Origin: Dimorphilus gyrociliatus | Lineage: Eukaryota > Animalia > Annelida | Direction: 5' to 3' | DNA: 64,000 bases | Assembly: GCA_904063045.1 (NCBI GenBank) | Contig: CAJFCJ010000023.1 | Span: forward strand, 682,001 to 746,000 | Shown here: piece after piece, positions 1-53,302 of the stretch | How positions within the stretch are numbered: the stretch's first letter is position 1 | Layout: the number at the start of each line of letters is the position of its first letter | Notes under the pieces: generated by a model | The model's input: the letters and a program-made list of their open reading frames with translations, nothing else | Databases searched by the model: none | Told to the model about the DNA's origin: nothing | Position numbers and translations under genes: made by a program

Positions 1-1256
1 TATCAAAATTTGACATTAATCTAATTTTATTTAAGCCTAATCTACATTAGATGTTTGTATACTTGCAATGAATTTCGTATATATCCCTCCTCCTCTTTTT
101 TTTCCTATAAGCTGGAAAAATTTCTTTTTATGATAAATTGTTCCATCTTAGTAAATAATTTCCCTTCAAAGTGTCTATATAAGTGATAGACACTTTCCTA
201 TCTCGTTTGCATTGACGTCTGTAGCGGTTACATTATATAAAAGTAATGATCACGTGGTCAAGTCATGCCAACTTTTACACACACACCGCAAATTATATTT
301 CTTTTCTTTTCTCTTTACTTTCATTAAATGATAATATAAATAGATATGAAAGAATTGGTGAGTAACTATATTATATTAAGCTATACAGTATATACATCGT
401 ACACTGCAAACTACCTTATGTAAAATATACAATGCGTATATTAGTAATGAGTAAGAAGTATATAATCTCTCTCGCTCTCTTACTCTTTCCCTCTTTCCCT
501 CTTTCCCTCAATATACAGTATATTAGTATATATAACCTAACTTTTATGTCATCGTGAGGAATTTTATGCGATTACCCTTAACCCTAACAGATACACCACG
601 TAGGATGACAAAAAATGAAAAGTGTAAACTTGATCAAATTCTTGAGGACGAACAACGAGCCACGAACTATTCTTTTTTCGACAGATAATAATCGTTTAAT
701 ACCTTCATTCTACGCAAACTAACGTCAAATTCTATTGAATATAGAATCGACATATGTGAGAAAGAGGGAGACGGTTGCGAGGGGAAGAAAATAAGAAGAA
801 CGCTTAAGAAACCTTTTTCTATATGAAGGAAATATAAGAAAAAAAGCAAATATTTTTTCGCTTTGAGCATATTCCACTAATTAGTTGACTTCATTAATTT
901 GTTCGTTTCGTCGTTAAACTATATACTGCGTATTCTTCTATTCAACATTTATATTTATAAGTTGAGATAAAAGGTTAGAAAGGAAGGAGAAAGGATTAGG
1001 ATCCATATAGATAGAGAGTGAAAAACGATAGCTGTAAATTACTATTTAGGGATGGGGAATGGAATTAAAGCTGCTGAACTTGTCGGAGGTCAATGGCGAG
1101 GGTTGAAGGCCTTGTAGACTGGCTGTTGAAGCAAAAAAGAAGCGGATTATCGATATTTAAATTTTGCCTAATTGCCAAGCATACTTGTGTAAAAAGAAAA
1201 AAAATTGTTCCTCTAAGAAATGCGCGCACGCGCTCTTCGAAGCGTTTACCGTTCTT

Positions 1257-1264
1257 TATAAAAG
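1257..1264 (+). promoter_or_regulatory. TATA box of the neuropeptide precursor gene
   Basis: TATAAAAG lies about 30 nt upstream of a pyrimidine-CA initiator-like site (~1289) and 58 nt upstream of the ATG at 1315. Confidence 0.55.
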
Positions 1265-1314
1265 CCGCTGCGTAAGCGTCTTTTCTATCACAGACACGAG
1301 TTTCGACGGAAGAG

Positions 1315-2763
1315 ATGAGAGCTATAATTTTTGGTCTACTAGTATGCCTAGTTCTGGCAAACGCCAACTTTTATGGAAAAAGAGGTAGATATATTTGAAC
1401 TTTTAAACTTGAAGCAGTCATTCTTCTCGTCTCGTTAGTTAAAAGATGATCAACTACACTGTAAATATTGTAAATGAAATCGATAATCATTACGTAAACC
1501 GAGCTAGTCATTCTCTTTTATTCTCTGCAAAATATTCCACTTTATGTCTAATAAAAAAAGATACAATAAGAAGAAACTGAAGAATACGCAAAACCTAACA
1601 CTGGCCTCTTTTCTAAATGAATTTACTTTTCATTATGAAAATTGGATAATAATTTCTCTGCTAAATTCAACTAAGGCGAGAGGAAGGTGAGGAAGAAGAG
1701 GAAGAACACGAGGAAGAAGAAGAAGGGAAAGATAACTCGATTGACGGGAAAAAATTGAGACAATATACTCTTTTTCAAGCATAATAACCGATAATCAAAT
1801 ATCTCAATTGTGTTACTTGGTATAGTTTATTCATTCATTCATTCGTTCGCAATGCGAACACCTACACATAAATATATGTATAGATTTCGGGTCAAGATGA
1901 TGCGTGTTTTTTGCTTGAACAGCATTATTTCGTTAAGCAAGTCGTTCGCTTGCTTTTCTCCTCCTTCTACCTTCTTACTTTTTGTATTTGTTGCTTAGTT
2001 ATTTATTTACTTCTAGTGGTTGTTGAGCTGGTTGCCTATTTCATAAATTTAATAAGGCTACATATTTTGGCATTTAAAAAAGAAATTAGAAACCTACCCT
2101 TGCCTAACAGGCGAAATAAGATATTCAGTAGAACAGAATAATCAAAATATTTTTGGTTCATCAAAAAGTTCAATAAGAAAATTATATCATCATCTGATAG
2201 TTCTTCACCCCTCTCAATCTTCTTCGACAGGCAGAGAGGAGAGAGACGAAAGGACGAGAGAGAGACAGAGACAGAGAGAGAAGGAGATAAAGAAAGTAGA
2301 AAGGAAGGAAGAGAGATAAAAAGTAGAGGGAATAATAATTGATTATGAAAGAATGAAAGAATCTATATATACAGTACATATATTAATATATATTTCTCTG
2401 TAATCTATTCTTCTTAAGTACTTAATAAATGACTATAAATTAGTAAATATGTATAGATAATTTGCTGGTGTTGTAATAAACGATATATAGGAAAGATACA
2501 TTATACAAACACTATATTCTGTAGATTTCTTTGTTTGCATAAATACCATGGATATTTACAGATATTGATTAAAAAGTAACTAATAATTGCTTTTCTCTAC
2601 AAACACAGATTTCGGTGGGAAATCATTAAAAGAAATGTTGGCTAGCGCAGGGAATGAAGCTGATCAGCTGGAAGCAGTTCAAACTATAATGAAAATTGAC
2701 GAAATTTTGAACAACTATAAAGCGTCGAGGTTTGCATCATTCAAGAGAAACGGAAGAAAATGA
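1315..2763 (+). CDS. Neuropeptide precursor, NdWFamide-like (predicted mature peptide NFY-amide), 74 aa
   Basis: join(1315..1384,2609..2763), phase-1 GT-AG intron. Translation: MRAIIFGLLVCLVLANA-NFY-GKR-DFGGKSLKEMLASAGNEADQLEAVQTIMKIDEILNNYKASRFASFKRNGRK*. Has a hydrophobic signal peptide ending A-N-A, a Gly amide donor plus KR cleavage site, and AATAAA immediately at the stop. Confidence 0.8.
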
Positions 2764-3928
2764 ATAAAAAGATCTAATAGAGTTGACAATTTTCTTTTGT
2801 TCAAATCTCTGGAATCTACCTTAACGCGCTTAATACATGTATGAAAAATATGAGCTATTTTATGATAGTATTATACATTTGAATCTATATCTATATATAC
2901 TCTTAGTACCCATAAATATAGATTCATTGTATATTTTTAAACGCTGTATATTCACTATATGTGGTTTACGAAATACAGGTGTACATATACAAATATACTG
3001 TACATGTATACAGTATACACAATATATAAATATACATACTGTATAGACGAGATACATAAATATGTATATAAACATCTTTGCAGGCACTGATAAGCATATA
3101 TCAAATACTAATAGTTATCGTTATAATTGCTATTGCCATCAAACGCCTTTTTGTATAGGCCTTCTCTATAATCAAGGGAAGAGCCATCTAATTGCTTCCA
3201 ATAGCAAAATATTTATCAGGGTTTATCGGGTAAAGCGGAGAGCGAGAAAGAGAGAAGAACAGAAATAGACAACCAAAAAGAAAAAGTATATATTTACCAT
3301 CAAATTATGCACGAAAGGATAAGAATTAAAGGAAAAAGTACAAGGTAATAGATGACTACTTGTATCATTTAGTTGTTTAATGTAACTCTACATTACAAAC
3401 TGCGTTTTTATAGAGGAAAATCTTTTATAATAGTAAAATATACAGGCTAACAAACTATTTATTGTAGAAAATGAATTTTAAATGGCTTTTCTCTTTCATT
3501 TACTAATAATGTAATTAAAAATTCAATTACCCGTCTTTCTTTCTATCTCTCTTGCCAACAGTTATCCGATATTTACCTTAAGGTTATCTTTATTTAAAAA
3601 AAACGCTTGCATCGTTGATTTCTAACTCATTATCGCCAAATTACACTCTTCCACATTTCCAACGAATATTTTCATTTCTTCAGTTTTAGCCTTACGCATT
3701 CTCTTTCTTCTTCACTTTTTTCTTTTTCCTAATCCTTTCTTTCTTCCTCAGACTCTCTTTTAATCAAAGAGAGGAATAGGTATTAACTGAAAATTTCTTA
3801 AAATTAAAATACTTAAGCCGAGCTTTTAGCGGAGAGTATTTTTGAAAAAGGAAAGCATACTGAGAGAGAGAGAGAGAGCAGACAATCATTATTAGTAGTT
3901 ATTAAATATATTATTATTTTGGATTTAC

Positions 3929-4136: not shown

Positions 4137-7100
4137 CTTTCGTACACATTAGTAAAAGACACCTATCCATACAGGGTTGTACCTATAGCGGCCGGTCTGA
4201 CCGTAAATTATTAAACATTTTATTCATATCGAATAGGTAGATAAATGAATCAAACAACCAACAAGCCAAGTAAGCAAAATATAAATACCGTTATAATAAA
4301 ATGCTGAAAAGGTTTTATTTTTAAAAGAAGAGACCTGGAGAACTTTATTCATTTTAATTATATCCAAAGTAAGAGAATAGCTATAAAAGTACTCTTCTCC
4401 TCCTCTATCATTAATTAACGAAAACATTATTAATTTATTCTTATTCTGTAATCTACACGTAAAATTAAAAGTTAATTTTAAATTATCCAGTCAAAAAGAG
4501 AAGAGATAAAATACGAAATTGCACCAGCCTCTTTACAGATAGTTTATCTCAATAATAAACCTCATCTAAAGAAATTTAACAGATTTAATTTGTAACTGAA
4601 ATTTAACTGAAAGGTAGAAAGTCCAAAAAACCCTACAAACAAACAATAAAGAAAGGGAGGGAGGAAGAACAGAGGAGAGAAAGAGCGACAGAGAGAGAGA
4701 GAAGAGAGAGAAAGAGAGGGAGTGAGAGAGGGAGAGTAAGTGAGTGAGTGAGTGAGTGAGTAAGAAAGGAAGGAGAAAAGAAAGGAAGAAAGAAAAAATT
4801 TGAAAATGAAAAGCATTCTTTCATGCGAGGTTTTTCATTTTTTCTTCACTATCTGCATTTTTTCATCATTCGTAGAGTCGTCAGAAGACTAGCCAGAGAG
4901 TGTACTTTATCTCTATATACCATATATCTATATATATACATTGTATATAGCATACTTTCTACGTATCTTGCAAAAAAAAGGTGACTTGAGAATTTTTGCG
5001 GTGACGAATCGAGTTATCAAGTACAGTACTGTAAATGGTAGTTAAGCTTTGTTGTCTTTTTTTCATCGTCTCCTTGCTCTTGTTCTTCTTCACCTTCTTC
5101 TCATTGGCCAATCTCCTAGGGGTGACGCAACTTTTTTCATAATATACTGTTAGTGAGAAAAAGGAATGGTGACAAGGTAATGTGCTCAAGGCCTACTAGG
5201 CTGATTGATGGAGATGTAAAACTTTACCTAGTCAACCTCCCACTCAAGCCCAGGTTGTATGAAATTAAAAATAATCAACCAAATGTCATTCTACTATTCA
5301 AACTTATTAAAGAGAAAGATATTAAATTTGGGTGAAATTTGCTTGGTTAAGACTACTTTTACTCCTTCAACGTATGTGCTTAGTCTCTAAATAGGGAGAG
5401 TTTCTGTTTACACAAACATATGGTAAAGATGAGGTTGTTGGATAAAAGAACTGATTTGATAGCTACCAAAGTAAATTGACTTTTATACAGATCTTTTGTA
5501 CGATTCTATCGGATTCTTATTTAAGATATAAGTATTATTCAACGATTTTTCGTAGAATTCTCTTAAATAATAACTCGCATCTTTCATTGGTAAATTCCTT
5601 GGTGCTAATCCTTTTGATATTTTTCCCTCCCTCCGTCCTTCTCTCTATCTCTATCTCTGTCTCTCTGTCTCTCTGTCTCTCTCTCTCCCTCTCTCTCTCT
5701 CCCAAAAAGATTATTAACTTTTCAAATATCTTTAATTTTCTTTGCTATTTCCATTTCTCATTTTCCCATTTCCCATGTGCAGTCCAATTGAAAAAAGAGT
5801 TAAAAATCTTTTTGTCGCATTCCAATCTATTTGCAAGCCATTTAAATTATTCGGATCAATTAATAAATAAATAAATAATGTAATTAATTGAGTTTATGTA
5901 AATTAGTGTCCAGATTCGATAGTTAGGTAGTTAATTCATTCGTTAATTCATTCGTTTATTTTCTGAATGGTTTAGAAATATTATTTCGCTGCTGAAAATA
6001 AATTGCAAAATCATTTAGCGAAGGAAAAAACAGCGATACTTGACAAAGGTTTCCCTCTATCAAGCCTTTGAAAACCAATCCGTTTCTCACTAAACGCTTT
6101 TTACATTTAGAAACGTGGTCAAGGGCTAAGCTGCGGGTAATTCTTTAACATATATTCAGTATACAGTATATATACTCTATATACTAATATATACTTGTTA
6201 TGTACAATTCTTCGACATTCTAAATGATTTAATTTAATTCAATGTCATTCTATAGACTTTTAGGTTTTACTTGATTTTCTCTTCTAATAACAAATACACT
6301 ATTAAAATATAAACTCAAATCATTTCATTATAGGAGAAGAAGCTAATTTACGGAATTTGATTTTTCCGTTATATTCAACAGGCAGAAACTAATGATTTCC
6401 TATTCAAAATATAATCCCTCCATCAATCAGTCAATCAACAGTTTGAATATTTTTTTACTTAATTCTTTAGGTGAAGAATTCTCTAATTTTTTTATTGAAA
6501 TATTAAATAGAATTAACAATATTGCTTTCTAGACGAGAAAGGAAAAAAAGCAGAGAGAGAGAGAGAGACGGACAGACAGACTTTACTTTTCTCTTAGACT
6601 TTAGCTCCATCTTTTGGATAAGAAAACTTTTTGATTTCGTTTGACGTTTACCAATAAATCTTGCTTGTAGATAAGAAGAGATGAACTATTTTTCTTTTAT
6701 TTGTTTTCGTTCGAAGCAGCTTTATTTATTTACATAAGCATATTTCACAAAGCGTTCCGATTATTCGTACTTCTTTATGTAGAAAGAAGAACTAGTTGAA
6801 CTATCAATTGATTATTAAGTTTTATTGAAAATTCAATCATTCCATTTAAATCTCCGCCAGAACATTGCGGATTGGCAAAACCATTAAGCTCGTAGTGTTC
6901 TCGTACATCTCTACTCTATGTTATAGAGAATATACGCTTATGAGCAAATATACTCTATAGTATATATGTTTTCCTAGTACTGTCCGCTATCGCCTGCAAA
7001 CGTAAAATGCTTTTGCACACTAACATTTATGTACTGTGATTATGTTATCCATCCACAGAGTGTCGATGGTATTTCTTCCCTCTCTTCCTTAAATATCAAA

Positions 7101-8530
7101 CTGAATCACTGTAAGTAGCATACTGCTATCTTTAACTGATTGTTGTTATACTCTCAAAAATAGCTAGAATAGCTCTCTTTCGAATAAAAATAAAGTACAC
7201 CTAGCAGACATTTATTATAAAATATACGTGTTGAATAAATAACCTATAGATTGTTAAAAGAAATTTCGGCTAATAGTACAGAATATCATGTATAAAGAGA
7301 TTATATCTAATATAGCATCCGTACGAAAGTGGAACATGTGGATAAATATGCGAAGAGGATGTGTTCATGGAGTCTCTCCCTTCTCCTATGTTTTTCCTTC
7401 ATTCCTTCTATCTGTGCGTGTATGTGTGTGAGTGTGAGTGTGTATGTGTCTGTGTCTGTGTCTCTATCTCTGTCTCTGTCTCTACCTGTCTATCTGTCTT
7501 TCTCCCTCTCTTCTTCCGTCCCTGCCTCCGTCCCTGCCTTCCTCCTGCTCTCTTCTTAACATCATATAAATTACGCACTTAGCTGTAGCCACATGTAGAA
7601 TAATATTTCAAGGTTAATGATATTTTGAAATCCGCTATCCTCATCAAAATGTATCAAAAGAGAAAGAGTTGAAGTCTAGGGGAATGAAAGATTTTAAAAG
7701 TCATCGAGTACTGTTGTTGAGTACTGATTATTAGATGTTTCTTGTATTATGCCAAATATATCATATTTATGGAAACTATATTAAAAAGATAATGTAAACA
7801 AAGAAAAGAAAACGCAATAAAATCATTGATTTCAGCTTTTTTAACCTGGGAAAAGTCGGCAAAGTCTCGTTTTCTTCTTTCTTTTCTTTTTCGCCTTATA
7901 AATCAACCAAAGATTTATGGCTATTTTTTAATGCCTATGCATAACCTGTTGGCAACCTTCTCTTAGTTAATACCATCTATCTTGGAACTTCCTCCCTTAT
8001 TATGAAATATTCGAAAGAGAGGTGTTGCCATTAATTAAAGAGAATATACTGTATATAGTATTTAGGAGTGAGATTGTAAATGTATTATTTGACTTACTTC
8101 ATCTGCCAGAAGGTAAAAGTGGTGAATTGGCGAAGAGAGGAGAGAAGAAGCTATTATAATTTTCACTTATTATCCTTACAGGCTATCTAATTGCTAATTT
8201 GATAGTGATCTACGCTAGGAATGAGGAATGCGCGAAATGTGTGTTTAAGAAATATACAATATATATATATATACTGTATTAACATTATCTATGTCGTTTT
8301 AATGAGGGTTATGAAGAGAAGATTTTGACGAATAAGCAATTATTCCCTTATATATTATAGATACTGTATACTGTATATAAATAGCCTATATATACATGTA
8401 TATGTTCGCAATCTAATGATTGTATGTTTTTTGTATTTCTCTCCTCGAAAGAAGCAACGATCCGCTGTATATTCAATTTCACATAGCATAGCTGGGTGGA
8501 GAAATCGTGATAATTTTAATTAAAACAAAC

Positions 8531-23765: not shown

Positions 23766-26240
23766 TTAAGAGGAGGAGGAGGAGGAGGAGGAGAAGTGGG
23801 AGGAGAATTATAATGATGATGACGATGAGGAGGAGGAAATGCGTGTTTTTTACTTGCTATTATTATCTTTTCATTAGTAGTGCTGAGCGCTTTAGGACTT
23901 TTAATAAGAGACTATTTACATTTTTTTTCGCGTTGTAGGAGGAGAGCTGATCCATATATTTACTTGCTCTTAATTTATCGATATATCCAATATATCCTTG
24001 TTGGATTGCTGTAACGATTTCTTTAATCTAGATGACAGAAGAAAAAGAAAACAAACTCAAAGTATTACGGATAAGCCTAATTCGTTCAAGCTATTTGCTT
24101 ATATTACTTGCGACATGTGGTAGGCTTTTGTTCTCGTTAGCTTCTTCTCAACCATTGAAACGCCTTCCGGTAAATGGAGTATTGTGTTGAGGAGACACAT
24201 GTACTCGTCGGTAAACAATGACCTATCCGGTCTGTCGCTCTCTTTAACCGTCTTGAGAAAATTGCTGATATATGTGCTATATGATCCTCCATATTCGTAG
24301 ATTGAATTTTCTAATATCATCCACAGAACGTAATTATTCAATTTCCTTTGATGATTAAGCAAAATGAATTTTTCACCGCCTAAAGCTTAATTACGTTCGC
24401 TTAAGAAAAGAAATACCTTTTCATATCAAAACTCTTATCTTTAAAGTAACTACAAAAGCTTTTTATAGACTTTTCCTCTCGAATGATTATGTTTGTACTG
24501 TTTTTAAAAAGTTTCTTCTTTCCCGTAAACAGATTATTAATAAATTTCAGCCAATCCAACTGATGAGAAGAAGCCAATAAATAAAGAGATCAAAAAATCA
24601 ACAGCCATATACAAATAGGACAAAATAGTGAATTATTAATGTATATACAAGCGTATATAGTAATATTTACATTTGGGCATATCTTATATAGGTAGGAAAT
24701 TTTCACTGTGTAGCTTCTTCCGTACTCTTGAGGATAGTAATTCTTAAAATAAAAAGGCAAACTGAATGTGAACGCTTCTTTCTTTATCACAAGTCATTTA
24801 ATACAATACTTTATATATATCGTTCGTAATCGCAAGAGAATCGTTAACGAATTCGGTTAACTGCTGGTCATTAACTTTTCTACCAGTTTCTTCTAATGCA
24901 TGATTCATTGAATCCTTCATAAATGTTGTGTAGGCGTTGATCTTCTGTATCCAAAATCAATTATGCTCATTTCTTTGCTGTTTGTTTAGAAATGTATGAA
25001 ATTACCTGCGTTGAATTTGACGTCAGAGCTAAATAGTTCCAAGTAAAAATTGATGAATGGGGACCCAACTATGACAGAGGAGAAAAAGTTTTTAATTTAG
25101 TTTCTCAATGCGTTTCTCTCGAGATTTGAAAGAAATATTACGCTAAGAAGTGTTGAAGAATCTTTAGAAGGATGTGGCCCCGCTACTATTGAAAAGAAGA
25201 CTAATGGTCCAAAAGTTTTTGTAATTTTGGTTACAGCGTCCGTAAAGTCCCAATCTGTACCGGTCCATTTATCCTAGAAAATGAAGAAAATTGTATAAGG
25301 AACAAAATTCGTTTAACACAAACTGCTATCGCATTGATTTGGTTTTGCTATTTAAAGGAAATAAGAAAGAAAGGAAGGAAGGAAGAGAGCGAGAGAGAGA
25401 GAGAGAGTGAGAGAGAGAGCAAGGGGGCAAACCTAGACCTAACCCTGTTAGGGATGAGTAGTTTTGACGTTTTATAACGTACCTCCAGTAACCATATAGA
25501 CAATTTCATCTTGTTAAATATTTTCTCTATAGTATTTAAAAGTTTTCTCGAGTAAGACTTATAAATACAAGATCTGTAAAAGTTCTTTGCCGCAACGTAA
25601 GGTTTATAATAGTATTTCTTCCTCCAGGACACCATATCTGAAAGAATCACGAACAAATTTTAAAAAGACAATGAGAAGAGTAAGTAGAGGCGGAGAGGGA
25701 GGGGAGGGGGGGCGAAACACAGACAAACTTATTCATAAGTTTAAAATTACATTTTCTAACTGGTTTCATCAGTTCATTCTTTATCTTCATCCAAATATCG
25801 TATTTTAAAGATTCCTTTATAGTATACTTAACCGAGTAGAACTCTTGTTGAGGATACTGGTTTCGATTGATAAAACCACCGCAAGCGTACTGGTAAAAAT
25901 CCTCACAGGGCGATACTCTTCTATCCATATTTTCGGATATTTTTGCCGTCATTCTAAGGCATTCTCCCGTATTACATTCGTAATTCCCATTCGAGAAGGA
26001 TGATTCGATTTTAGCCGACAAATTAACGTTATCTAGCAGATATCTTTCGGCCCAAATCGATTCGGGATGAACAATAAATTTCTGTTGGATAGATGACAAT
26101 TTTACAGCGACAACTCCTATACCCGCCACGAGAAAAACGCTAATAGTTATAAGTAGGATTGATAAGGTTGCAACGATAGATTCCTTGTAGTGTTGAGCGT
26201 AAACTCTGATTCGAAGGATGTACGATGTTTCCTCGTTCAT
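22297..26240 (-). CDS. Neprilysin/ECE family (peptidase M13) type II membrane protein, predicted catalytically inactive, ~789 aa
   Basis: 15 exons: 25751-26240, 25483-25637, 25142-25273, 25006-25068, 24810-24944, 24671-24742, 24417-24559, 24108-24345, 23920-24027, 23501-23560, 23213-23410, 23036-23132, 22712-22911, 22539-22643, 22297-22470; phases consistent (exon 1 donor least certain). N-terminal TM anchor, CNTGEC, PCEDFYQYACGG, LNNYVLW, WWTPET, LSGLGLSARQTFFLAAVQ, EFQQAYKC. Confidence 0.88.
23704..23793. repeat. Compound (TAC)n plus (GAG)n microsatellite in an M13 gene intron
   Basis: About 20 TAC units followed by a GAG run. Confidence 0.9.
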
Positions 26241-29510: not shown

Positions 29511-30410
29511 CTATGTACTCTTTATGCAATGGCAAGACTTTGATTGTTTGCGACGACATAAAACTTCTCTTGCCGTGGTATTCATAGCAAAATAGACGAC
29601 AGGATTAGTAATCAAGTTTAAGCTAAATAATATCATAACAGTTGATTTGACACCAGCCGATATCGGATTGTCGTCCTTATCCAACCACATGACAATCATC
29701 GAAGGCATATAGCTAGCATTGAATAATACGAATAGAATAATGAATTGAACAGCCAATTTTGTGTGTTTCGGGTCGAGATGACTACTATTTTGTACAGCCA
29801 CTTTTACCCTGGCCCTTTTCACAGTAACGTAGATTTGACAATAAACGAAGCAGGTAACAATGTTGGGAACGGCGAAAACAGCAACAGTAACAAATATTCC
29901 GTATGGTATATTATCCTCGAAAACGAAACAGCATACGCAACTGAAGCGTAATCTAACTGGGACAAGATGGAGAAGTTGAGGTAGTGAAACAAGTAAAGAC
30001 AAATTCCATACAATTGCAATGCATATTAGGGTAGTTTTCATGGTAATTTTAGTTGAATTTCTTAAAATTGCTACATAACGGTTACAGGCAATAAAAACCA
30101 TACAAAATGATACTGCAACGGGAGGAGAGAAAGTCAAAAAAGCGAAGAATCTGCATAATAATCCATTAACGAAGAAAATTTTGAATTCTTCCATCAAAAA
30201 CAAAAATGCATTAATTGATAAATAGATATCGGCCACGAATAAATTAACAACGTACATGTTATGCGGAGTTCTCAACTTTTTGTTCACAAATATTATTAGA
30301 ATTGATAACAAATTTGTAAAAAAGCCTAATATTGAGATGATCCCATACGTAAGAGTAACATTCTGATTAATTTGCATATTCCTCACAGTGAAATTGGTTA
30401 TATTACTCAT
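29511..30410 (-). CDS. Intronless class A GPCR, melatonin-receptor-like orphan, 299 aa
   Basis: Seven hydrophobic segments from MSNITNFT (N-glycosylation sequons). Motifs: GFFTN in TM1, KKLRTPHNMYVVNLFVAD, CNRY at the DRY position, SYMP in TM6, NPVVY in TM7. Confidence 0.85.
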   Translation of the reverse strand: MSNITNFTVRNMQINQNVTLTYGIISILGFFTNLLSILIIFVNKKLRTPHNMYVVNLFVADIYLSINAFLFLMEEFKIFFVNGLLCRFFAFLTFSPPVAVSFCMVFIACNRYVAILRNSTKITMKTTLICIAIVWNLSLLVSLPQLLHLVPVRLRFSCVCCFVFEDNIPYGIFVTVAVFAVPNIVTCFVYCQIYVTVKRARVKVAVQNSSHLDPKHTKLAVQFIILFVLFNASYMPSMIVMWLDKDDNPISAGVKSTVMILFSLNLITNPVVYFAMNTTAREVLCRRKQSKSCHCIKST

Positions 30411-31878
30411 TGTGTCGTCTCTGTCTCTTTTTCGTTCTTTTTCTCCTCTCTCTCTCTCTCTCTCTCTCTCTTTCCTTTCCTCTAATCTCTCTCTTTCTCT
30501 CCTTATTTTTTGCTCTGTTTCTTTATTTTTCTTTACTCTTTCTTCCTTACTCACGTTGTCCGTCTCTCTCTCTCTCTCGCTATCTCACCTTTCACTCTCA
30601 GCCTCTCTCTTTCTCGTTCTCTCTTTCGCTCTCTATCTAGCTTTCACTCACTCTCTCCCGCTCTAATAGTAGCTTTTACTACTTACATATATACTTATAT
30701 ATATAAGATATATATATATAAGAAAATGTATGTCTGTCTTATCTTTGATAAGACGAAGGGGGTTATGTAAATAGTGGAATTAGAAGCTCGTTTATTGGTT
30801 AGCTGACTCTAGTTTTCTTTTTTGATTTTAATAGACGGCGTCTAATGAATAAAAAATATAAAATAATTATTTGTAAACGGTGTTTTTAGTTGTGTTGTTG
30901 AAATTGATTTTTGATGAGTTGTATTAATACTTTGCCCAACTAATCATATTATTTTCGTAAACAACACTTGACTTGCTTTTCATTTGCTGTCGATAAAAAC
31001 AAAAATATCCAAGTGCTTATTATAAAATACTAATATATATATATATAAATTTATTCTATACAGTATATACGTTTTGGATGGAAAGTAATCAAACTCTTTC
31101 CTTTCAAGATCTATTAAAAGGTTTATGTGAAAGTTAAAATACGGTAGAAATCATGCAATCTATAGGTTCTTATTATGTAATCTCTTAGTAGTCCGTATTT
31201 CATCCGCAAAGAGACTGAAAAGGGAGGCAAAGGGAAAGAATGGGGGTTATTCAGAATAAAACTACCGGATTAAATATCTATTTGGCTAAAGTTGACTCTC
31301 CACAGCTTTGTAAGTGGATTGATAAGGAAAGCAGGACATACTTGAGATATAAAAATACACTTATTTCTTCCTATTTTTTGCTTTCCTTTTCTTTTCATTT
31401 TCCCTTTAGAGATTATTTTAAATTATAAAAAATCCACAATCTACAATCTACAGTGTACATTGTATTTGTAATACACTGTATGTTCAGTTTACTGTATGGT
31501 TCACCCTTTTAACTCTTTCATCAAAAGTAAAAGACTTTAGACTTGGAGCTATTTCTTAAAAACTGTTTAATATATCCTTTTTGTCCTTTTCAAACGTGTC
31601 TGCTTGCTTGGAAGGCGAAAGTGTAAGGACATGATTTTTCTTTTACAGATGGCGTTCTTAGTCTTGTTTTTCTTTTTTGCAGCTTTTTCTCACACTTTCT
31701 CTCTCTTCAGACCTTTCTTTTTCTTTCTTGCTTTCTTTCTTTCTTTCTGGCTATATCTGTTTGTCTGTCTGTCCGTTTCTTTCTCCCTCCATCACTCTCT
31801 TCCTCTCGCTGTTTTCTCACTCCACTTACTTTATTACGCAAAAGCTACCTTGAATAGACATATTAATATTAACTGTAT

Positions 31879-32214: not shown

Positions 32215-33253
32215 ATGTCTCTTTTCAACATGGCAAATAACTCTTCTATACTTCTATACAAGTCCCTATTTTCTTCCGACACAATGTATCAAATAGTCTA
32301 CTTTTGTATTTTAGGATGTGCCGTGTTTCTAGCTTTGGTAGGAACAATTGGAAACATTCTATCTGTTCTCGTTCTCAGAAGGCCAAAGATGAGAAATACG
32401 ACTTCCGCGACTTATATGCAATGGTTGGCGGCAATTGATACTTTTCTTTTAAATTTGATTCTTGTTCCTTTTAACGTCATTCCCCTCCTGCATTTGTGGC
32501 ACGTTAGCAACTCATTTGCCAAAGGCTACGTTTGTCTGTACATCTATCCATTCTTTAATTGGCTATCCTCCGTCGAGCCGTGGATTATTGTAGCTATGAC
32601 GGCTGATCGCGCAATCGTCGTTTCACTTCCCACTAAAGCCAAATCGATTTGTACGAAAAAAAGAGCAAATATTCTCTGCAGTGTCCTTCTGCTTTCCCTA
32701 ATGGTTTTTCATTTTCAAAAATACGTTACAGTCGTCGGAGCAAGGATAATAGTTATGCCTTTTAACAGATGGATGTCCATTCCCTCTTGTATTTATAGGA
32801 ACGAAATTTCAAAAGTACTTAACGGAACTGTCTTGGGTGTTCTTCAGTCACTCTCAACTGGAATATTGCCCGCCTTCTTTTTAATTATTACCAATATTAT
32901 TATTGTTTACGGATTGGCTAAAGCAGATAGGCAGAGAAGAATAATGACGTCATCAGACTCGGCCACCGAACATAATTCCAAGTATGGGCAATAAAGAAAT
33001 AATGCACATAATTTTTTCTAGAACGAATCAATTTCTTTTTACGAGAGAGATTCTTTTTCTTTTACCATAAAGCTTATACGAAAATATGGAGACTGTATCT
33101 CCAAAGCAGAGTACAGTATACTCTATATAAAGTATTCATGAACATGTATAGTTTACCTTTACACGCCTGTAAAATTGCTTATAACCTATTCCTAGTCATG
33201 TAAAGGTAAGTTAAACAGACATTTACTTCACTTTATAATTATTTAATGATTTC

Positions 33254-35141: not shown

Positions 35142-38100
35142 TTAATGCTTTTCAATTAGGAACTTTGAACGATAATACAATAAAAGACGAGAGGTAGGCA
35201 TATGAGTAGCATAGTTAGTCAGTTGATCATGGTAGTCTAAAAGAGACAAATGCATACATTGCTCTTTGGTTTGTTTCTCTTTTTCCCCTCTCGTACGCAT
35301 AGATACAAACACACCGTCGATTGTATGCATGTACTAATATTTTATTTATACTAACACAATAACATCATTATCAGACAGTAATTTTTAATTGTCGAACTTT
35401 ATCTGATAAAAATTCAAGACACGGCAGTCAATAGAGAATTGGTCAATCTACTAACGTGTACTTATTTTAATGAGGGAGCTTTTTGAAAGAAAAAAATAAC
35501 ACACAATTATTGAACTCCTATCATCTAGTTCTTCTCTTTTTCTCTTCAATTTACGGACAATGAATCAGAATTAATTAGTCTTACTATTATAAAGGTGGCG
35601 TAGAAATGAGTGGATTTTTAACCTCTTGGCATAAAATTGTAAGTGTGTACCGCAATGAGTACAGGGGCATTGGATTTCCTGACGTTCTCTTCCTACCTAA
35701 TCTCTTTGTTAGGCTTATAAATATCAGTTAAAAATTGAAAAAATTAGAAAGGATTAGTTGTAGAATATTCCTTTCTCTTTCCCAAATTATATTTATTTCC
35801 TATCCGAATAAATGGATTAAATTGATTAATAAATTGACTAATTAATTAACTAATTTGTTGATTACTTGGCGAGTAGACTACTGATAGGAAAAGAATACAT
35901 ACCGTCGCTAAATCGAAGACGATCTTCTGCCAGATGGTCCATTTTTGCAGCAGTTGGAGCTGATTTGATTAGCCTGGAAACAGTCTGTTTTACGTTTCTC
36001 TCCGGTCTTATAATGATTATATACATCTTTGGTGCAAATAAACATACGAGGGTTACTGTAGCCGACAAAGATACAGAAAATGCTGTCGTTATCAATCGAA
36101 CGCTTATGTTAGCAGAAGTCGATGCATAGATTGGAACAAAAGCTAACCATATGATACAAATTGTATACATTGTAAAACCGATGTGCTTGCTTTCGTTAAA
36201 TGCCTCAGGTATGTTTCTAGTAAGAATTGCATAGATTGTGCAGATAACAACTAAGAACATGGGGTAAATTAAGCCTATAATAAAGCTAAAACCTACAGCC
36301 GATTCGCAAACTAATTGGTTAGAGGCTCTTGTGGGATAATAGTGCCTAATGTTAGGTGGGGAGAAAACCAACCAGATTGTACTTATAATAATTTGAACAA
36401 ATATTAAAACTGTACAAATAAGGATTTGAGAGACCGGTGAAATAAACTTTGGTCTCCTCGAAGTCCTTCTTCCAGCGCTGAATATCCTATATATTCTGTT
36501 GGTTTTAGTCAATAGAGCCGAGTAGGAGAGACTAAAGCTGAAACCAACCGCAAATTTTTGAACTGCGCAAATAATCTTTGTTGGTTTTAAAAGAAGAATG
36601 AAGCTAATGAAATAGCACAACAAGAGGCCCAGCAGTAGCATAGATGATAGTTCTCTTCCGGAAGCTATTAGTTAAAAGGTCATTAATCGTTATTTGTCTT
36701 TTAAATATTTTTCCATGAGAGGAGAATCTGCTGTACAGCCGACTTCACCTTTGTAAAGCCGTCTGACATTCCCTCCCTAACACAAAAGACGCACACGCCC
36801 GCACTCTTATTCTCGTTTTCTTCTTTAAGAAGAAAGGGAACTTAAGAAGAATTTTTTATCATATTCCTTTTATAAACCTCTTGTATAAGAGAAGGGTGAA
36901 CTTTTAAAAGAACGTAATAAAATTTAAGGATAATTAGCTTTTCTGCTGAAAATTAAAGGCTAGATAATAGATTTATAGGAAAATAGCTCTCTCTCTCTCT
37001 TTGTCTTACTGCTTTATAAATATAATATCCTGATTAATGACCTTTTACAACAGCCGTATCCCATCTCCTGCAAAAAACAGCCATCACAAATAACGTTGTA
37101 ATTATTCCAATAGACGCCAAACAGGCGGCAGATAGAGCTCCGGGTGAAAAGAATTTTAGGTATTCAAGAGGAAGCTCCTGACAAACTTTCAAATCTCCAG
37201 ATGGTATTGTCCCTTCAGGGCACAGTAGACATTCGTATTCCGTTGGACGAATATGCCATTTAGGGCACTTTGTACAAGTCCAGCAACAGATGACAGATCC
37301 CACTTCTTGTTTGATTTCGTTAAATTCGCATGGTGGAGAGCAACGACTCGGGGGATAATCAGTCTGATTAAGGCGGAATTGAAGATTTGAGCGATTGATC
37401 TGTAGCAAAGGAATAGATGTGCGTATGAGTAAGAAAAAGCTAATCAAAGTGTTATCATTAAGTGTAAAAATTAGGAGACGCGAAAAGTTTACTAATCGCG
37501 AACTCGGCGAATAATTTGGCATTCTACTCGAATATTTGGCCTATTATTGGACGAAACGAGAGAAGGAAGGATAGAGAAGGAGGGAGAGAAAGAGAAAAGG
37601 AAAGAGAGAGAGTATCTCTGAAGAAATTACTGTCCGATAATATATGGTCTTTAATAACATTATAAAAATTACAAGTAAATCTGTCGATAACTAGGTTGTC
37701 AAGAGATAAAATTTATGTGGTATAATATAAGAACTATATACAGTCTATACTGTATATACCGTTTAATGAGTAGATATCCTGTATAGCATTTAATCTTAGA
37801 TTCTACTCTTTTTGGATTATAGGTTAAATTGCTAATTATCATTTATCTCTGCCTTTAACTCAACAGAAATCAACTTTCTGAGCTTTCTGACCTCATTATA
37901 CAAACCTTTAAGCCATTTCCCTCGTGAACTCCAACTGTATGCCAACCGAAACTACCTGGAGAAGTTTGCTTATAGTGAAGGATTCTGTATCTGGGAGGTC
38001 CGTCTCCGTTGGGTAGAAAGTTGAAACTCAGCCCAGAGAGACCGGTAAAATTCACTTTTAGTAGATAAGACTTAAGCAATTCACCGTCGTACGGATCCAT

Positions 38101-52147: not shown

Positions 52148-53302
52148 TCAACCGATAGATGGCGTATTCAAACACATATTTATGAAAAACGCATGAAAAC
52201 GATAATCATCAGTTAGTTCAGGATGAAAGGATGTTGCCAGAAGTTGATTTTGACAAACGGAAACGGGATGCCTGAAAGAAAACCATGGTATTGGTGGATT
52301 GTTTTACAAATGTAATGGCTAATTATAAGCATCGCGTGCAATATTACTTTGTTTTGTCTAATTTACATATTGGAGTTATCGACGTATCAGCTACAGTCAA
52401 CTCAAAGGAATATTTATTCTTTTATATTATTATGTTGTCTACGAACCTGTCTAATGTTGCCAAAACGCGAACATCCTCCGAATCGATGCTCTTTATCGAA
52501 GGGGCTCTAATAAAGATTCCCGGAAATTCCCCTCCCAGCTCCTCGTCCAATGTCAACTTGGCTTCGAAACTATCCTTTTGCCGTCCATAGGAATTTCGAA
52601 CTGTTGTCACGTGCAAACCGCCAATCTTTTGAAAATAGAGATAGAATTAGAAAGAAAAAAGTCAAAACTATGACCAGAAAATTTGATTTCTTTTGACAAA
52701 TACTGACTAGTGATTGACTGTTATTTTTCCAATCCAGAACATTATTTGACAGTAGTATTAATCCAGCGCACGTTCCCCACATTGCTTTCTTTTTAGACAT
52801 CCAATCCCGTAAACTTTCCATAAAATCTTCCGCCTGCAATAATAAACAAACCCTCTGGGTATCAATTAATACAATTATCATTCTACCTGAATCATACTTT
52901 CCGCTATCCCTATTTACATAATCTTGCCAAATGAAAAACTTGAAAGAGAGTTTTTTCTCTTTCCTACTATTCCTAAAAGCTTTCTTTTCCGTTTCTCTAT
53001 CTGTCTGTCTGTCTGTCTCTCTCTTTTCTAACTCAATTATTCTTATCACAAATTACATTTTAAAAACGCTTATCAGCTTCTATGTTTATTCCTCTCTATC
53101 GCTGATGGTGTTTCAATTAGTGAGTAGAAAGAATAATTTTTCGGTTTATAAATCACCCTAACATGATCTCTACAGCCATGACTTCTTTCTATTCCTTCTT
53201 CTACCCTCTCTATCGTCATCAGTACCCCTATGGCTAACCCTAACCTTATCTTTAACCCTATCTTTTATACATATTACGTTTTTAGTGTGGTTTATAATTA
53301 AC

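What the first reader, a model, noticed from the sequence alone, without database searches (positions are those of the whole stretch)
1315..2763. Unannotated tripeptide neuropeptide gene: NFY-amide, a probable NdWFamide relative and candidate D-amino-acid peptide
The ORF track misses this gene. Seen in sequence: TATA box, signal peptide ending ANA, then immediately NFY-G-KR (1366-1383), one intron, a 51-aa C-terminal peptide with a further KR, and a polyA signal. Established: molluscan NdWFamide (Asn-D-Trp-Phe-NH2) is a cardioactive tripeptide with a D-residue at position 2. From memory, its precursor has the same layout, with the peptide directly after the signal peptide. Inference: this gene gives Asn-(D?)Phe-Tyr-NH2, possibly a new variant in this lineage.
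Basis: partly seen in the sequence, partly recalled or inferred. Interest (0 to 1): 0.78.

Follow-up and report, generated by a model that had tools for sequence, protein, structure and literature searches.

The report
Overlooked NFY-amide neuropeptide precursor gene
A tiny two-exon gene, missing from the gene set and from the published neuropeptide list of the miniature marine worm Dimorphilus gyrociliatus, encodes a secreted precursor built like the NdWFamide precursors of molluscs, ribbon worms and phoronids and predicts the amidated tripeptide Asn-Phe-Tyr-NH2; it would be the first annelid member of that family, but expression, splicing and the D-residue are still untested.

Summary
Window 1315-1384 encodes a 17-residue signal peptide ending A-N-A, followed at once by N-F-Y-G-K-R. 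A phase-1 GT donor follows. A good acceptor at 2608|2609 opens a 51-residue hydrophilic, helical tail that ends in a stop overlapping AATAAA.

The genome's assembly statistics match Dimorphilus gyrociliatus. The gene is absent from the protein collection that holds this genome's other predicted proteins. It is also absent from the published D. gyrociliatus neuropeptide list.

The layout matches the published NdWFamide family of molluscs, nemerteans and phoronids:
- a tripeptide directly after an "NA|N"-type cleavage site;
- G-K-R;
- 24-33 residues of spacer;
- a helix motif [VIYTA][LI]xxIxx[VIL][LIVA]xx[WY].

The motif is present here 25 residues after KR. It appeared in 7 of 200,000 shuffles.

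NFY itself is not new: the solenogaster Gymnomenia pellucida has A-NFY-GKR. No annelid member is listed in that collection.

Sequence searches with exon 2 found no relatives. The joined-exon search was left out by rule, so splicing and expression are unverified. A rival 54-nt intron would give ...GKR-VKR-stop. The D-Phe idea is plausible but untestable here.

Verdict: a probable new member of a known family, of moderate interest.

The parts
1257..1262 (+). TATA box (TATAAA), 53-58 nt upstream of the ATG
   Evidence: read directly from the sequence. The transcription start about 30 nt downstream is inferred.
1315..1365 (+). Signal peptide, 17 codons (MRAIIFGLLVCLVLANA); predicted cleavage after A-N-A
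   Evidence: The hydrophobic core has mean KD 3.3, and A occupies -3 and -1. The same 'NA|N' junction occurs in several published NdWFamide precursors. SignalP was not available.
1366..1383 (+). N-F-Y (1366-1374), amidation donor G (1375-1377), dibasic site K-R (1378-1383)
   Evidence: Identical to the A-NFY-GKR of Gymnomenia pellucida in the published family collection.
1384..1384 (+). Last base of exon 1, the first base of a split Asp codon; donor GAG|GTAGAT follows
   Evidence: The intron is phase 1, 70 nt into the CDS. This is the usual position in neuropeptide and secreted-protein genes (PMC13542836).
1385..2608 (+). Proposed intron, 1224 nt, GT..AG, containing GA-rich simple repeats
   Evidence: The junction is inferred, not observed. 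It is long for this genome, whose median intron is 66 bp.
1439..1449 (+). Rival exon start after a strong acceptor (TTCTTCTCGTCTCGTTAG|), giving a 54-nt intron; read in phase 1 it gives V-K-R-stop
   Evidence: 15 of 19 pyrimidines. An AATAAA near 1562 was read by eye.
2609..2763 (+). Exon 2 coding part: a 51-residue C-terminal peptide counting the split Asp, then stop TGA at 2761-2763
   Evidence: AlphaFold2 on the single sequence gives helices 7-13 and 17-49, mean pLDDT 82.5.
2683..2718 (+). Family-type helix motif T-I-M-K-I-D-E-I-L-N-N-Y, 25 residues after K-R
   Evidence: It matches [VIYTA][LI]..I..[VIL][LIVA]..[WY], a pattern derived from 15 published precursors. It appeared in 7 of 200,000 shuffles, and 4 times in 127,996 six-frame residues of the window.
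2763..2768 (+). Polyadenylation signal AATAAA overlapping the stop codon
   Evidence: The next polyA-like hexamer is at 3325.

Best explanation
This is the Dimorphilus gyrociliatus member of the NdWFamide neuropeptide family. It is a two-exon gene for a 74-residue prepropeptide.

Proposed mechanism:
1. The signal peptide (17 residues) is removed after A-N-A, which exposes Asn as the N-terminus.
2. A prohormone convertase cuts after K-R.
3. A carboxypeptidase trims K-R.
4. Peptidylglycine alpha-amidating monooxygenase turns the Gly into a C-terminal amide, giving Asn-Phe-Tyr-NH2.
5. The 51-residue helical tail is a family-typical associated peptide of unknown role.

By analogy with Aplysia NdWFamide, residue 2 (Phe) may be converted to the D-form after translation.

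Shown: the reading frames, the signals, the layout and the motif match. Inferred: splicing at 1384/2609, expression, processing, neuronal use and chirality.
For: - Sequence features are as described.
- Published family precursors from molluscs, nemerteans and phoronids share the layout: signal peptide, then [N/H][W/F/Y][F/Y]-GKR at once, then an acidic start, a spacer of 24-33 residues, a helix with the pattern VL..I..II..W/Y, and a short, often basic end. Here the spacer is 25 residues, as in Cerebratulus and Lineus, and all six constrained motif positions fit without gaps.
- The block S-L-K-E-M-L soon after KR parallels S-L-R-D-Y-I in Phoronis. This was compared by eye.
- Gymnomenia has the identical NFY-GKR.
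- The intron is phase 1, 70 nt into the CDS, as is typical for neuropeptide genes.
- This is the only site of its kind in the 77.9-Mb genome with a signal peptide in front.
- It is the only downstream acceptor giving a prohormone-like frame.
- The tail is predicted helical.
- The genome has copper-monooxygenase (PF01082) and convertase P-domain (PF01483) genes, and many amidated peptides are in the published list.
Against: - No significant sequence hit was found. The word search gave nothing. phmmer against 1.84 billion representatives gave only two spurious repeat proteins. The metagenome scan gave nothing.
- No transcript-derived protein is on record, although this genome's other predicted proteins are in the collection.
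- The intron is about 18 times the genome's median.
- A strong acceptor only 54 nt from the donor competes with the proposed one.
- The helix pattern was written after the tail had been seen, and it was aligned by eye.
- The 3' UTR implied by the overlapping AATAAA would be very short.
Confidence: 0.7

Rival explanations
1. A real secreted-peptide gene that resembles NdWFamide precursors by convergence only. It would be a lineage-specific small prohormone with a short aromatic amide placed right after the signal peptide.
For: No E-value-based homology was found. The arrangement 'signal peptide + peptide + GKR + associated peptide' is also used by the GnRH/AKH/corazonin-type precursors of this worm. 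Amphipathic helices are common, and the exon-2 peptide even drew weak TPR-repeat matches.
Against: The identical tripeptide occurs in a family member. The same 'NA|N' junction, the same spacer length and a gap-free match to all six constrained helix positions are unlikely together (7 of 200,000 shuffles).
Confidence: 0.12
2. The main transcript uses the near acceptor at 1438|1439 (a 54-nt intron), or is unspliced. The product would then be a 26-27-residue preprotein: signal peptide, NFY-GKR, then V-K-R-stop (or G-R-Y-I-stop if unspliced). The 2609 exon would not belong to the gene.
For: The acceptor has 15 of 19 pyrimidines and a TAG. The intron length is close to the genome's median of 66 bp, and the species splices short introns best. 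An AATAAA follows near 1562. NFY-amide would still be encoded.
Against: A 26-residue preprotein is very short for ER targeting. No family member is built that way. The 2609 exon carries the family motif in the right phase and ends in a stop plus AATAAA.
Confidence: 0.08
3. A chance arrangement or a silent relic. The AT-rich sequence happens to contain an ATG, a hydrophobic run and NFYGKR, and nothing is expressed.
For: The hexapeptide is at chance frequency in this AT-rich genome. No transcript-derived ORF is on record. The gene is absent from a transcriptome-based neuropeptide list.
Against: None of 17 comparable sites has a signal peptide. The TATA box, Kozak purine, phase-1 donor, branch site, acceptor, family motif, stop and polyA signal are all in place. 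A 74-residue ORF falls below the usual 100-residue cut-off of transcript ORF callers (my own knowledge), which explains the absence.
Confidence: 0.1

Closest known systems
NdWFamide precursors (Aplysia NdWFamide; family collection of De Oliveira et al. 2019 and Thiel et al. 2021: molluscs, nemerteans, phoronids)
   Same: - A single tripeptide [N/H][W/F/Y][F/Y] directly after the signal peptide.
- G-K-R after the tripeptide.
- A length of about 60-100 residues, with no Cys in the propeptide.
- A spacer of 24-33 residues, then the helix motif ending in W/Y, then a short basic end.
- The Gymnomenia pellucida precursor has the very same NFY-GKR.
   Different: - The host phylum: no annelid entry is in that collection, or in any paper found here.
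- Position 2 is Phe rather than the usual Trp.
- The residue after KR is D-F-G-G rather than the commoner G/E-D.
- The motif ends in Y, as in Tubulanus, Dreissena and Charonia, rather than W.
- There is an extra K-R near the C-terminus.
- No significant pairwise or profile score was obtained.
Achatin-type peptides (G-dF-x-D), including the D. gyrociliatus achatin precursor (GFGE copies) in the published list
   Same: Both are short peptides with an aromatic residue at position 2, the position isomerised to D in molluscs. Aplysia CNS extract isomerises both GFFD and NWF-amide. Achatin is present in this worm.
   Different: Achatin precursors carry several copies flanked by KR on both sides. Their peptides are not amidated, they do not lie directly after the signal peptide, and their precursor sequences are unrelated.
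GnRH/AKH/corazonin-type precursors of the same worm
   Same: One peptide directly after the signal peptide, then G-K-R and an associated peptide.
   Different: Those peptides are 8-11 residues long, begin with Q (pyroGlu), and have Cys-containing associated peptides. There is no similarity in sequence.

Membership tests
NdWFamide precursor family | One tripeptide [N/H]-[W/F/Y]-[F/Y] placed directly after the signal-peptide cleavage site | tested here: met
   NFY follows A-N-A. The 'NA|N' and 'QA|N' junctions and the NFY of Gymnomenia are in the published set. The cleavage site was judged by the -3/-1 rule only.
NdWFamide precursor family | Gly amidation donor plus Lys-Arg immediately after the tripeptide | tested here: met
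   G-K-R at 1375-1383.
NdWFamide precursor family | Short single-copy precursor (about 60-100 residues) with a C-terminal helix motif [VIYTA][LI]xxIxx[VIL][LIVA]xx[WY], 24-33 residues after KR | tested here: met
   The precursor is 74 residues. The motif starts at residue 26 after KR. It appeared in 7 of 200,000 shuffles, and the tail is predicted helical. The pattern is my own, drawn from 15 published sequences.
NdWFamide precursor family | Statistically significant sequence or profile similarity to known members | tested here: inconclusive
   Exon 2 alone finds no relative. Two comparisons were not run.
NdWFamide precursor family | D-amino acid at position 2 of the mature peptide | not testable with these tools
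   This needs chiral LC-MS or ion mobility. The neuronal isomerase gene is unknown, so its presence could not be sought.
NdWFamide precursor family | Transcribed, spliced and expressed in neurons | not testable with these tools
   No transcript collection can be searched by DNA here. No transcript-derived protein is on record.
Amidated neuropeptide precursors in general | Processing enzymes present in the genome (convertase, amidating monooxygenase) | tested here: met
   PF01483 P-domain at 9 places and PF01082 at 20 exon-level places in G000. 7B2 and many amidated peptides are in the published list.

The most novel reading that the evidence does not exclude
Dimorphilus makes Asn-D-Phe-Tyr-NH2. 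This would be the first annelid NdWFamide-type peptide and, besides achatin, a second D-amino-acid neuropeptide in a worm with a 78-Mb genome and a few thousand cells. The still unidentified neuronal peptide L/D-isomerase and the unknown NdWFamide receptor could then be sought by comparative genomics and GPCR deorphanisation in this small system.
Probability: 0.3. Interest if true: 0.6.

Novelty: new member of a known kind. Interest (0 to 1): 0.45.

Why it matters
NdWFamide is one of the few animal neuropeptides with a proven D-residue. Published surveys found its precursor family in molluscs, nemerteans and phoronids but listed no annelid. An annelid member would close that gap and would show the family was not lost in Annelida.

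It would also add a gene to the 'canonical' neuropeptide set claimed for a model of genome compaction. It shows that precursors shorter than about 100 residues escape standard annotation.

The peptide is only three residues long and cheap to synthesise in both chiral forms. Receptor pairing and the role of the D-residue would therefore be directly testable.

Tried and rejected
- **Pfam on both exons:** only a sub-threshold DUF6000 match.
- **Word search of the 5.8-billion protein collection** with the exon-2 open frame: no candidate.
- **phmmer of exon 2 against 1.84 billion representatives:** two hits, a 1061-residue TPR-CHAT protein and a 1413-residue Ig-like protein. Both arise from summed weak repeat matches and were rejected as spurious.
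- **JGI metagenome scan:** 599 pattern hits, none confirmed.
- **Paralogues in the genome:** exon 2 is single-copy. The NWFGKR, NWYGK and other NF[FY]GK sites elsewhere have no signal peptide.
- **Overlapping or antisense ORFs** (1065-1367 minus strand, 1164-1388, 1093-1275, 1911-2141): no family match.
- **Supplements of De Oliveira et al. 2019:** no NdWFamide sequences are held as text.
- **Isomerase gene search:** not possible, because the enzyme's gene is unidentified.

- any search, fold or look-up with the joined exon-1 + exon-2 protein, or with a junction-spanning DNA pattern;
- any profile or alignment that would have needed the published family sequences to be typed in.

Full report
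**What is in the sequence**

- The window is AT-rich (about 33% G+C) and eukaryotic. It holds rhodopsin-type and class C GPCR exons and an M13 peptidase exon.
- At 1315-1383 the + strand reads MRAIIFGLLVCLVLANA followed by N-F-Y-G-K-R.
- One further base (G, 1384) precedes a donor, GAG|GTAGAT.
- The acceptor ...TTGCTTTTCTCTACAAACACAG| ends at 2608. A CTAAT branch-like site lies about 27 nt upstream of it.
- From 2609 the phase-1 frame continues for 51 residues, counting the split Asp. It ends at TGA 2761-2763, which overlaps AATAAA at 2763-2768.
- TATAAA lies at 1257-1262. An in-frame TAA lies 13 codons before the ATG.

**Which genome**

Earlier notes of this scan name the worm Dimorphilus gyrociliatus. 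I checked this against the genome paper, which reports a roughly 78-Mb assembly in about 350 scaffolds with N50 2.24 Mb. G000 has 77,897,245 bases in 349 contigs, and contig C14 is 2,241,898 bases long. I accept the identification.

**Is it more than chance?**

- The hexapeptide alone is not. A loose DNA pattern gave 49 hits against 53 for the reversed control.
- I translated the 17 other sites that encode N[FW][FY]GK (13 of them with the full KR). None is preceded by a Met-initiated hydrophobic leader.
- I read all 494 AG dinucleotides in the 7.6 kb after the donor in phase 1. Only 2609 (and an internal AAG in the same frame) opens a hydrophilic frame of prohormone character. The other long frames are hydrophobic AT-rich noise or simple repeats.
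- Exon 2 is single-copy in the genome.

**Comparison with the known family**

The supplement of Thiel et al. 2021 (PMC8557429, file 27) also carries the clusters of De Oliveira et al. 2019. It lists NdWFamide precursors from gastropods, bivalves, a cephalopod, a solenogaster, nemerteans and phoronids. All share these features:

- a signal peptide ending in a small residue, often '..NA' or '..QA';
- the tripeptide NWF, NWY, NYF, HWY or NFY directly after it;
- G-K-R;
- usually an acidic start to the tail;
- a first short amphipathic stretch;
- a helix 24-33 residues after KR, in which V/A/T/I/Y, L/I, I, V/I/L, L/I/V/A and W/Y recur at fixed spacing.

The Dimorphilus sequence fits each point:

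- The junction is 'A-N-A|N'.
- The tripeptide is the same NFY as in Gymnomenia pellucida.
- S-L-K-E-M-L parallels S-L-R-D-Y-I of Phoronis (compared by eye).
- T-I-M-K-I-D-E-I-L-N-N-Y begins 25 residues after KR, the same distance as in Cerebratulus and Lineus.

I turned the helix into the pattern [VIYTA][LI]..I..[VIL][LIVA]..[WY], using residue classes taken only from the 15 published sequences. It matches exon 2 once. It appeared in 7 of 200,000 shuffles of the exon-2 peptide, 4 times in 127,996 six-frame residues of the window, and in 2 of 398 open segments of 50 or more residues, one of which is exon 2 itself. The pattern was written after I had seen the tail, so these numbers are indicative rather than exact probabilities.

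Two further points agree:

- AlphaFold2 on exon 2 alone predicts helices 7-13 and 17-49 at mean pLDDT 82.5.
- The intron is phase 1 and lies 70 nt into the coding region. A recent Conus genome study describes this as the rule for neuropeptide and secreted-protein genes (PMC13542836).

**What could not be shown**

- Similarity searches with exon 2 gave nothing real. The word search found no candidate. phmmer against 1.84 billion representatives returned only a TPR-CHAT protein and an Ig-repeat protein, both through summed repeat matches. The metagenome scan found none. Pfam found none.
The joined protein was therefore neither built nor searched, and no junction-spanning pattern was used.
The family comparison rests on reading and on the short pattern.
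- No tool here queries RNA-seq by DNA. The 1384/2609 junction and expression therefore remain inferred.

**Is it unannotated?**

- The protein collection does hold this genome's predicted proteins. The neighbouring intronless GPCR returns a 100%-identical 299-residue entry flagged as the window's own.
- Nothing of 32-101 residues shares words with exon 2.
[quoted passage not shown] It contains no NFYGKR, FYGKR, MRAIIF or 'NdWF'.
- A 74-residue ORF lies below the usual 100-residue threshold of transcript ORF callers (my own knowledge). This would explain the omission.

**Rival gene model**

A strong acceptor (15 of 19 pyrimidines, TAG) ends at 1438, only 54 nt after the donor. This is close to the species' median intron of 66 bp. 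In phase 1 it gives V-K-R-stop. The unspliced frame gives G-R-Y-I-stop. Either would still encode NFY-G-KR, but in a preprotein of only 26-27 residues, unlike any family member. The family motif in the 2609 exon makes the long-intron model more likely. Only junction reads can settle this.

**Mechanism**

The proposed steps are signal-peptidase cleavage after A17, convertase cleavage after K-R, carboxypeptidase trimming, and amidation from Gly, giving Asn-Phe-Tyr-NH2.

- The genome has convertase P-domains and copper-monooxygenase domains.
- The worm's published list holds 7B2 and many amidated peptides.

On the D-residue:

- Aplysia NdWFamide has D-Trp at position 2.
- Aplysia CNS extract converts NWF-amide to NdWF-amide and GFFD to GdFFD (PMC11277431).
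- Dimorphilus has an achatin precursor.

D-Phe2 is therefore plausible. The neuronal isomerase gene is unknown, and chirality cannot be read from DNA.

**Novelty**

- The family is known and already regarded as lophotrochozoan.
- NFY-GKR is already in the published collection.
- What is new is the phylum. No annelid entry is in that collection, and no paper in the library links NdWFamide precursors to annelids.
- The gene is also an addition to the Dimorphilus neuropeptide set.

I rate it a new member of a known kind, of moderate interest.

Noticed in passing
window 29511-30554 (-), 32215-32994 (+), 35862-36641 (-) and 37034-37522 (-): A group of GPCR genes about 27-35 kb downstream. It comprises an intronless rhodopsin-type receptor, a second 7tm_1/Srw-like ORF, and exons of a class C receptor (NCD3G + 7tm_3). 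The first receptor's predicted protein is 299 residues, and it has a 78%-identical relative in a Logan assembly, possibly a related dinophilid. No link to the peptide gene is shown.
   Followed up: partly
window 25647-26240 (-): An exon matching the N-terminal domain of M13 peptidases (neprilysin/ECE type), below Pfam's cut-off (26.5 against 32 bits).
   Followed up: no
window 52570-53049 (-): An ORF with a SNO (PdxT-type) glutamine amidotransferase match (31.4 bits, above the cut-off). This is a vitamin B6 synthesis gene that many animals lack.
   Followed up: no
G000:C5:2135587-2145757, G000:C2:3215970-3220169 and G000:C2:3497125-3499687: Several copper type II monooxygenase (PF01082) domains lie close together, suggesting tandem PHM/DBH-like gene copies or multi-domain genes.
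   Followed up: no
window 1680-1720 and 2230-2320: GA-rich simple repeats inside the proposed intron. Similar CT/GA runs recur at 4560-4820, 5535-5705 and 7330-7580.
   Followed up: no
window 1281-1293: A pyrimidine-rich ...TTTTCTATCACAG just upstream of the ATG could be an acceptor for an upstream 5' exon, instead of the transcription start implied by the TATA box.
   Followed up: no
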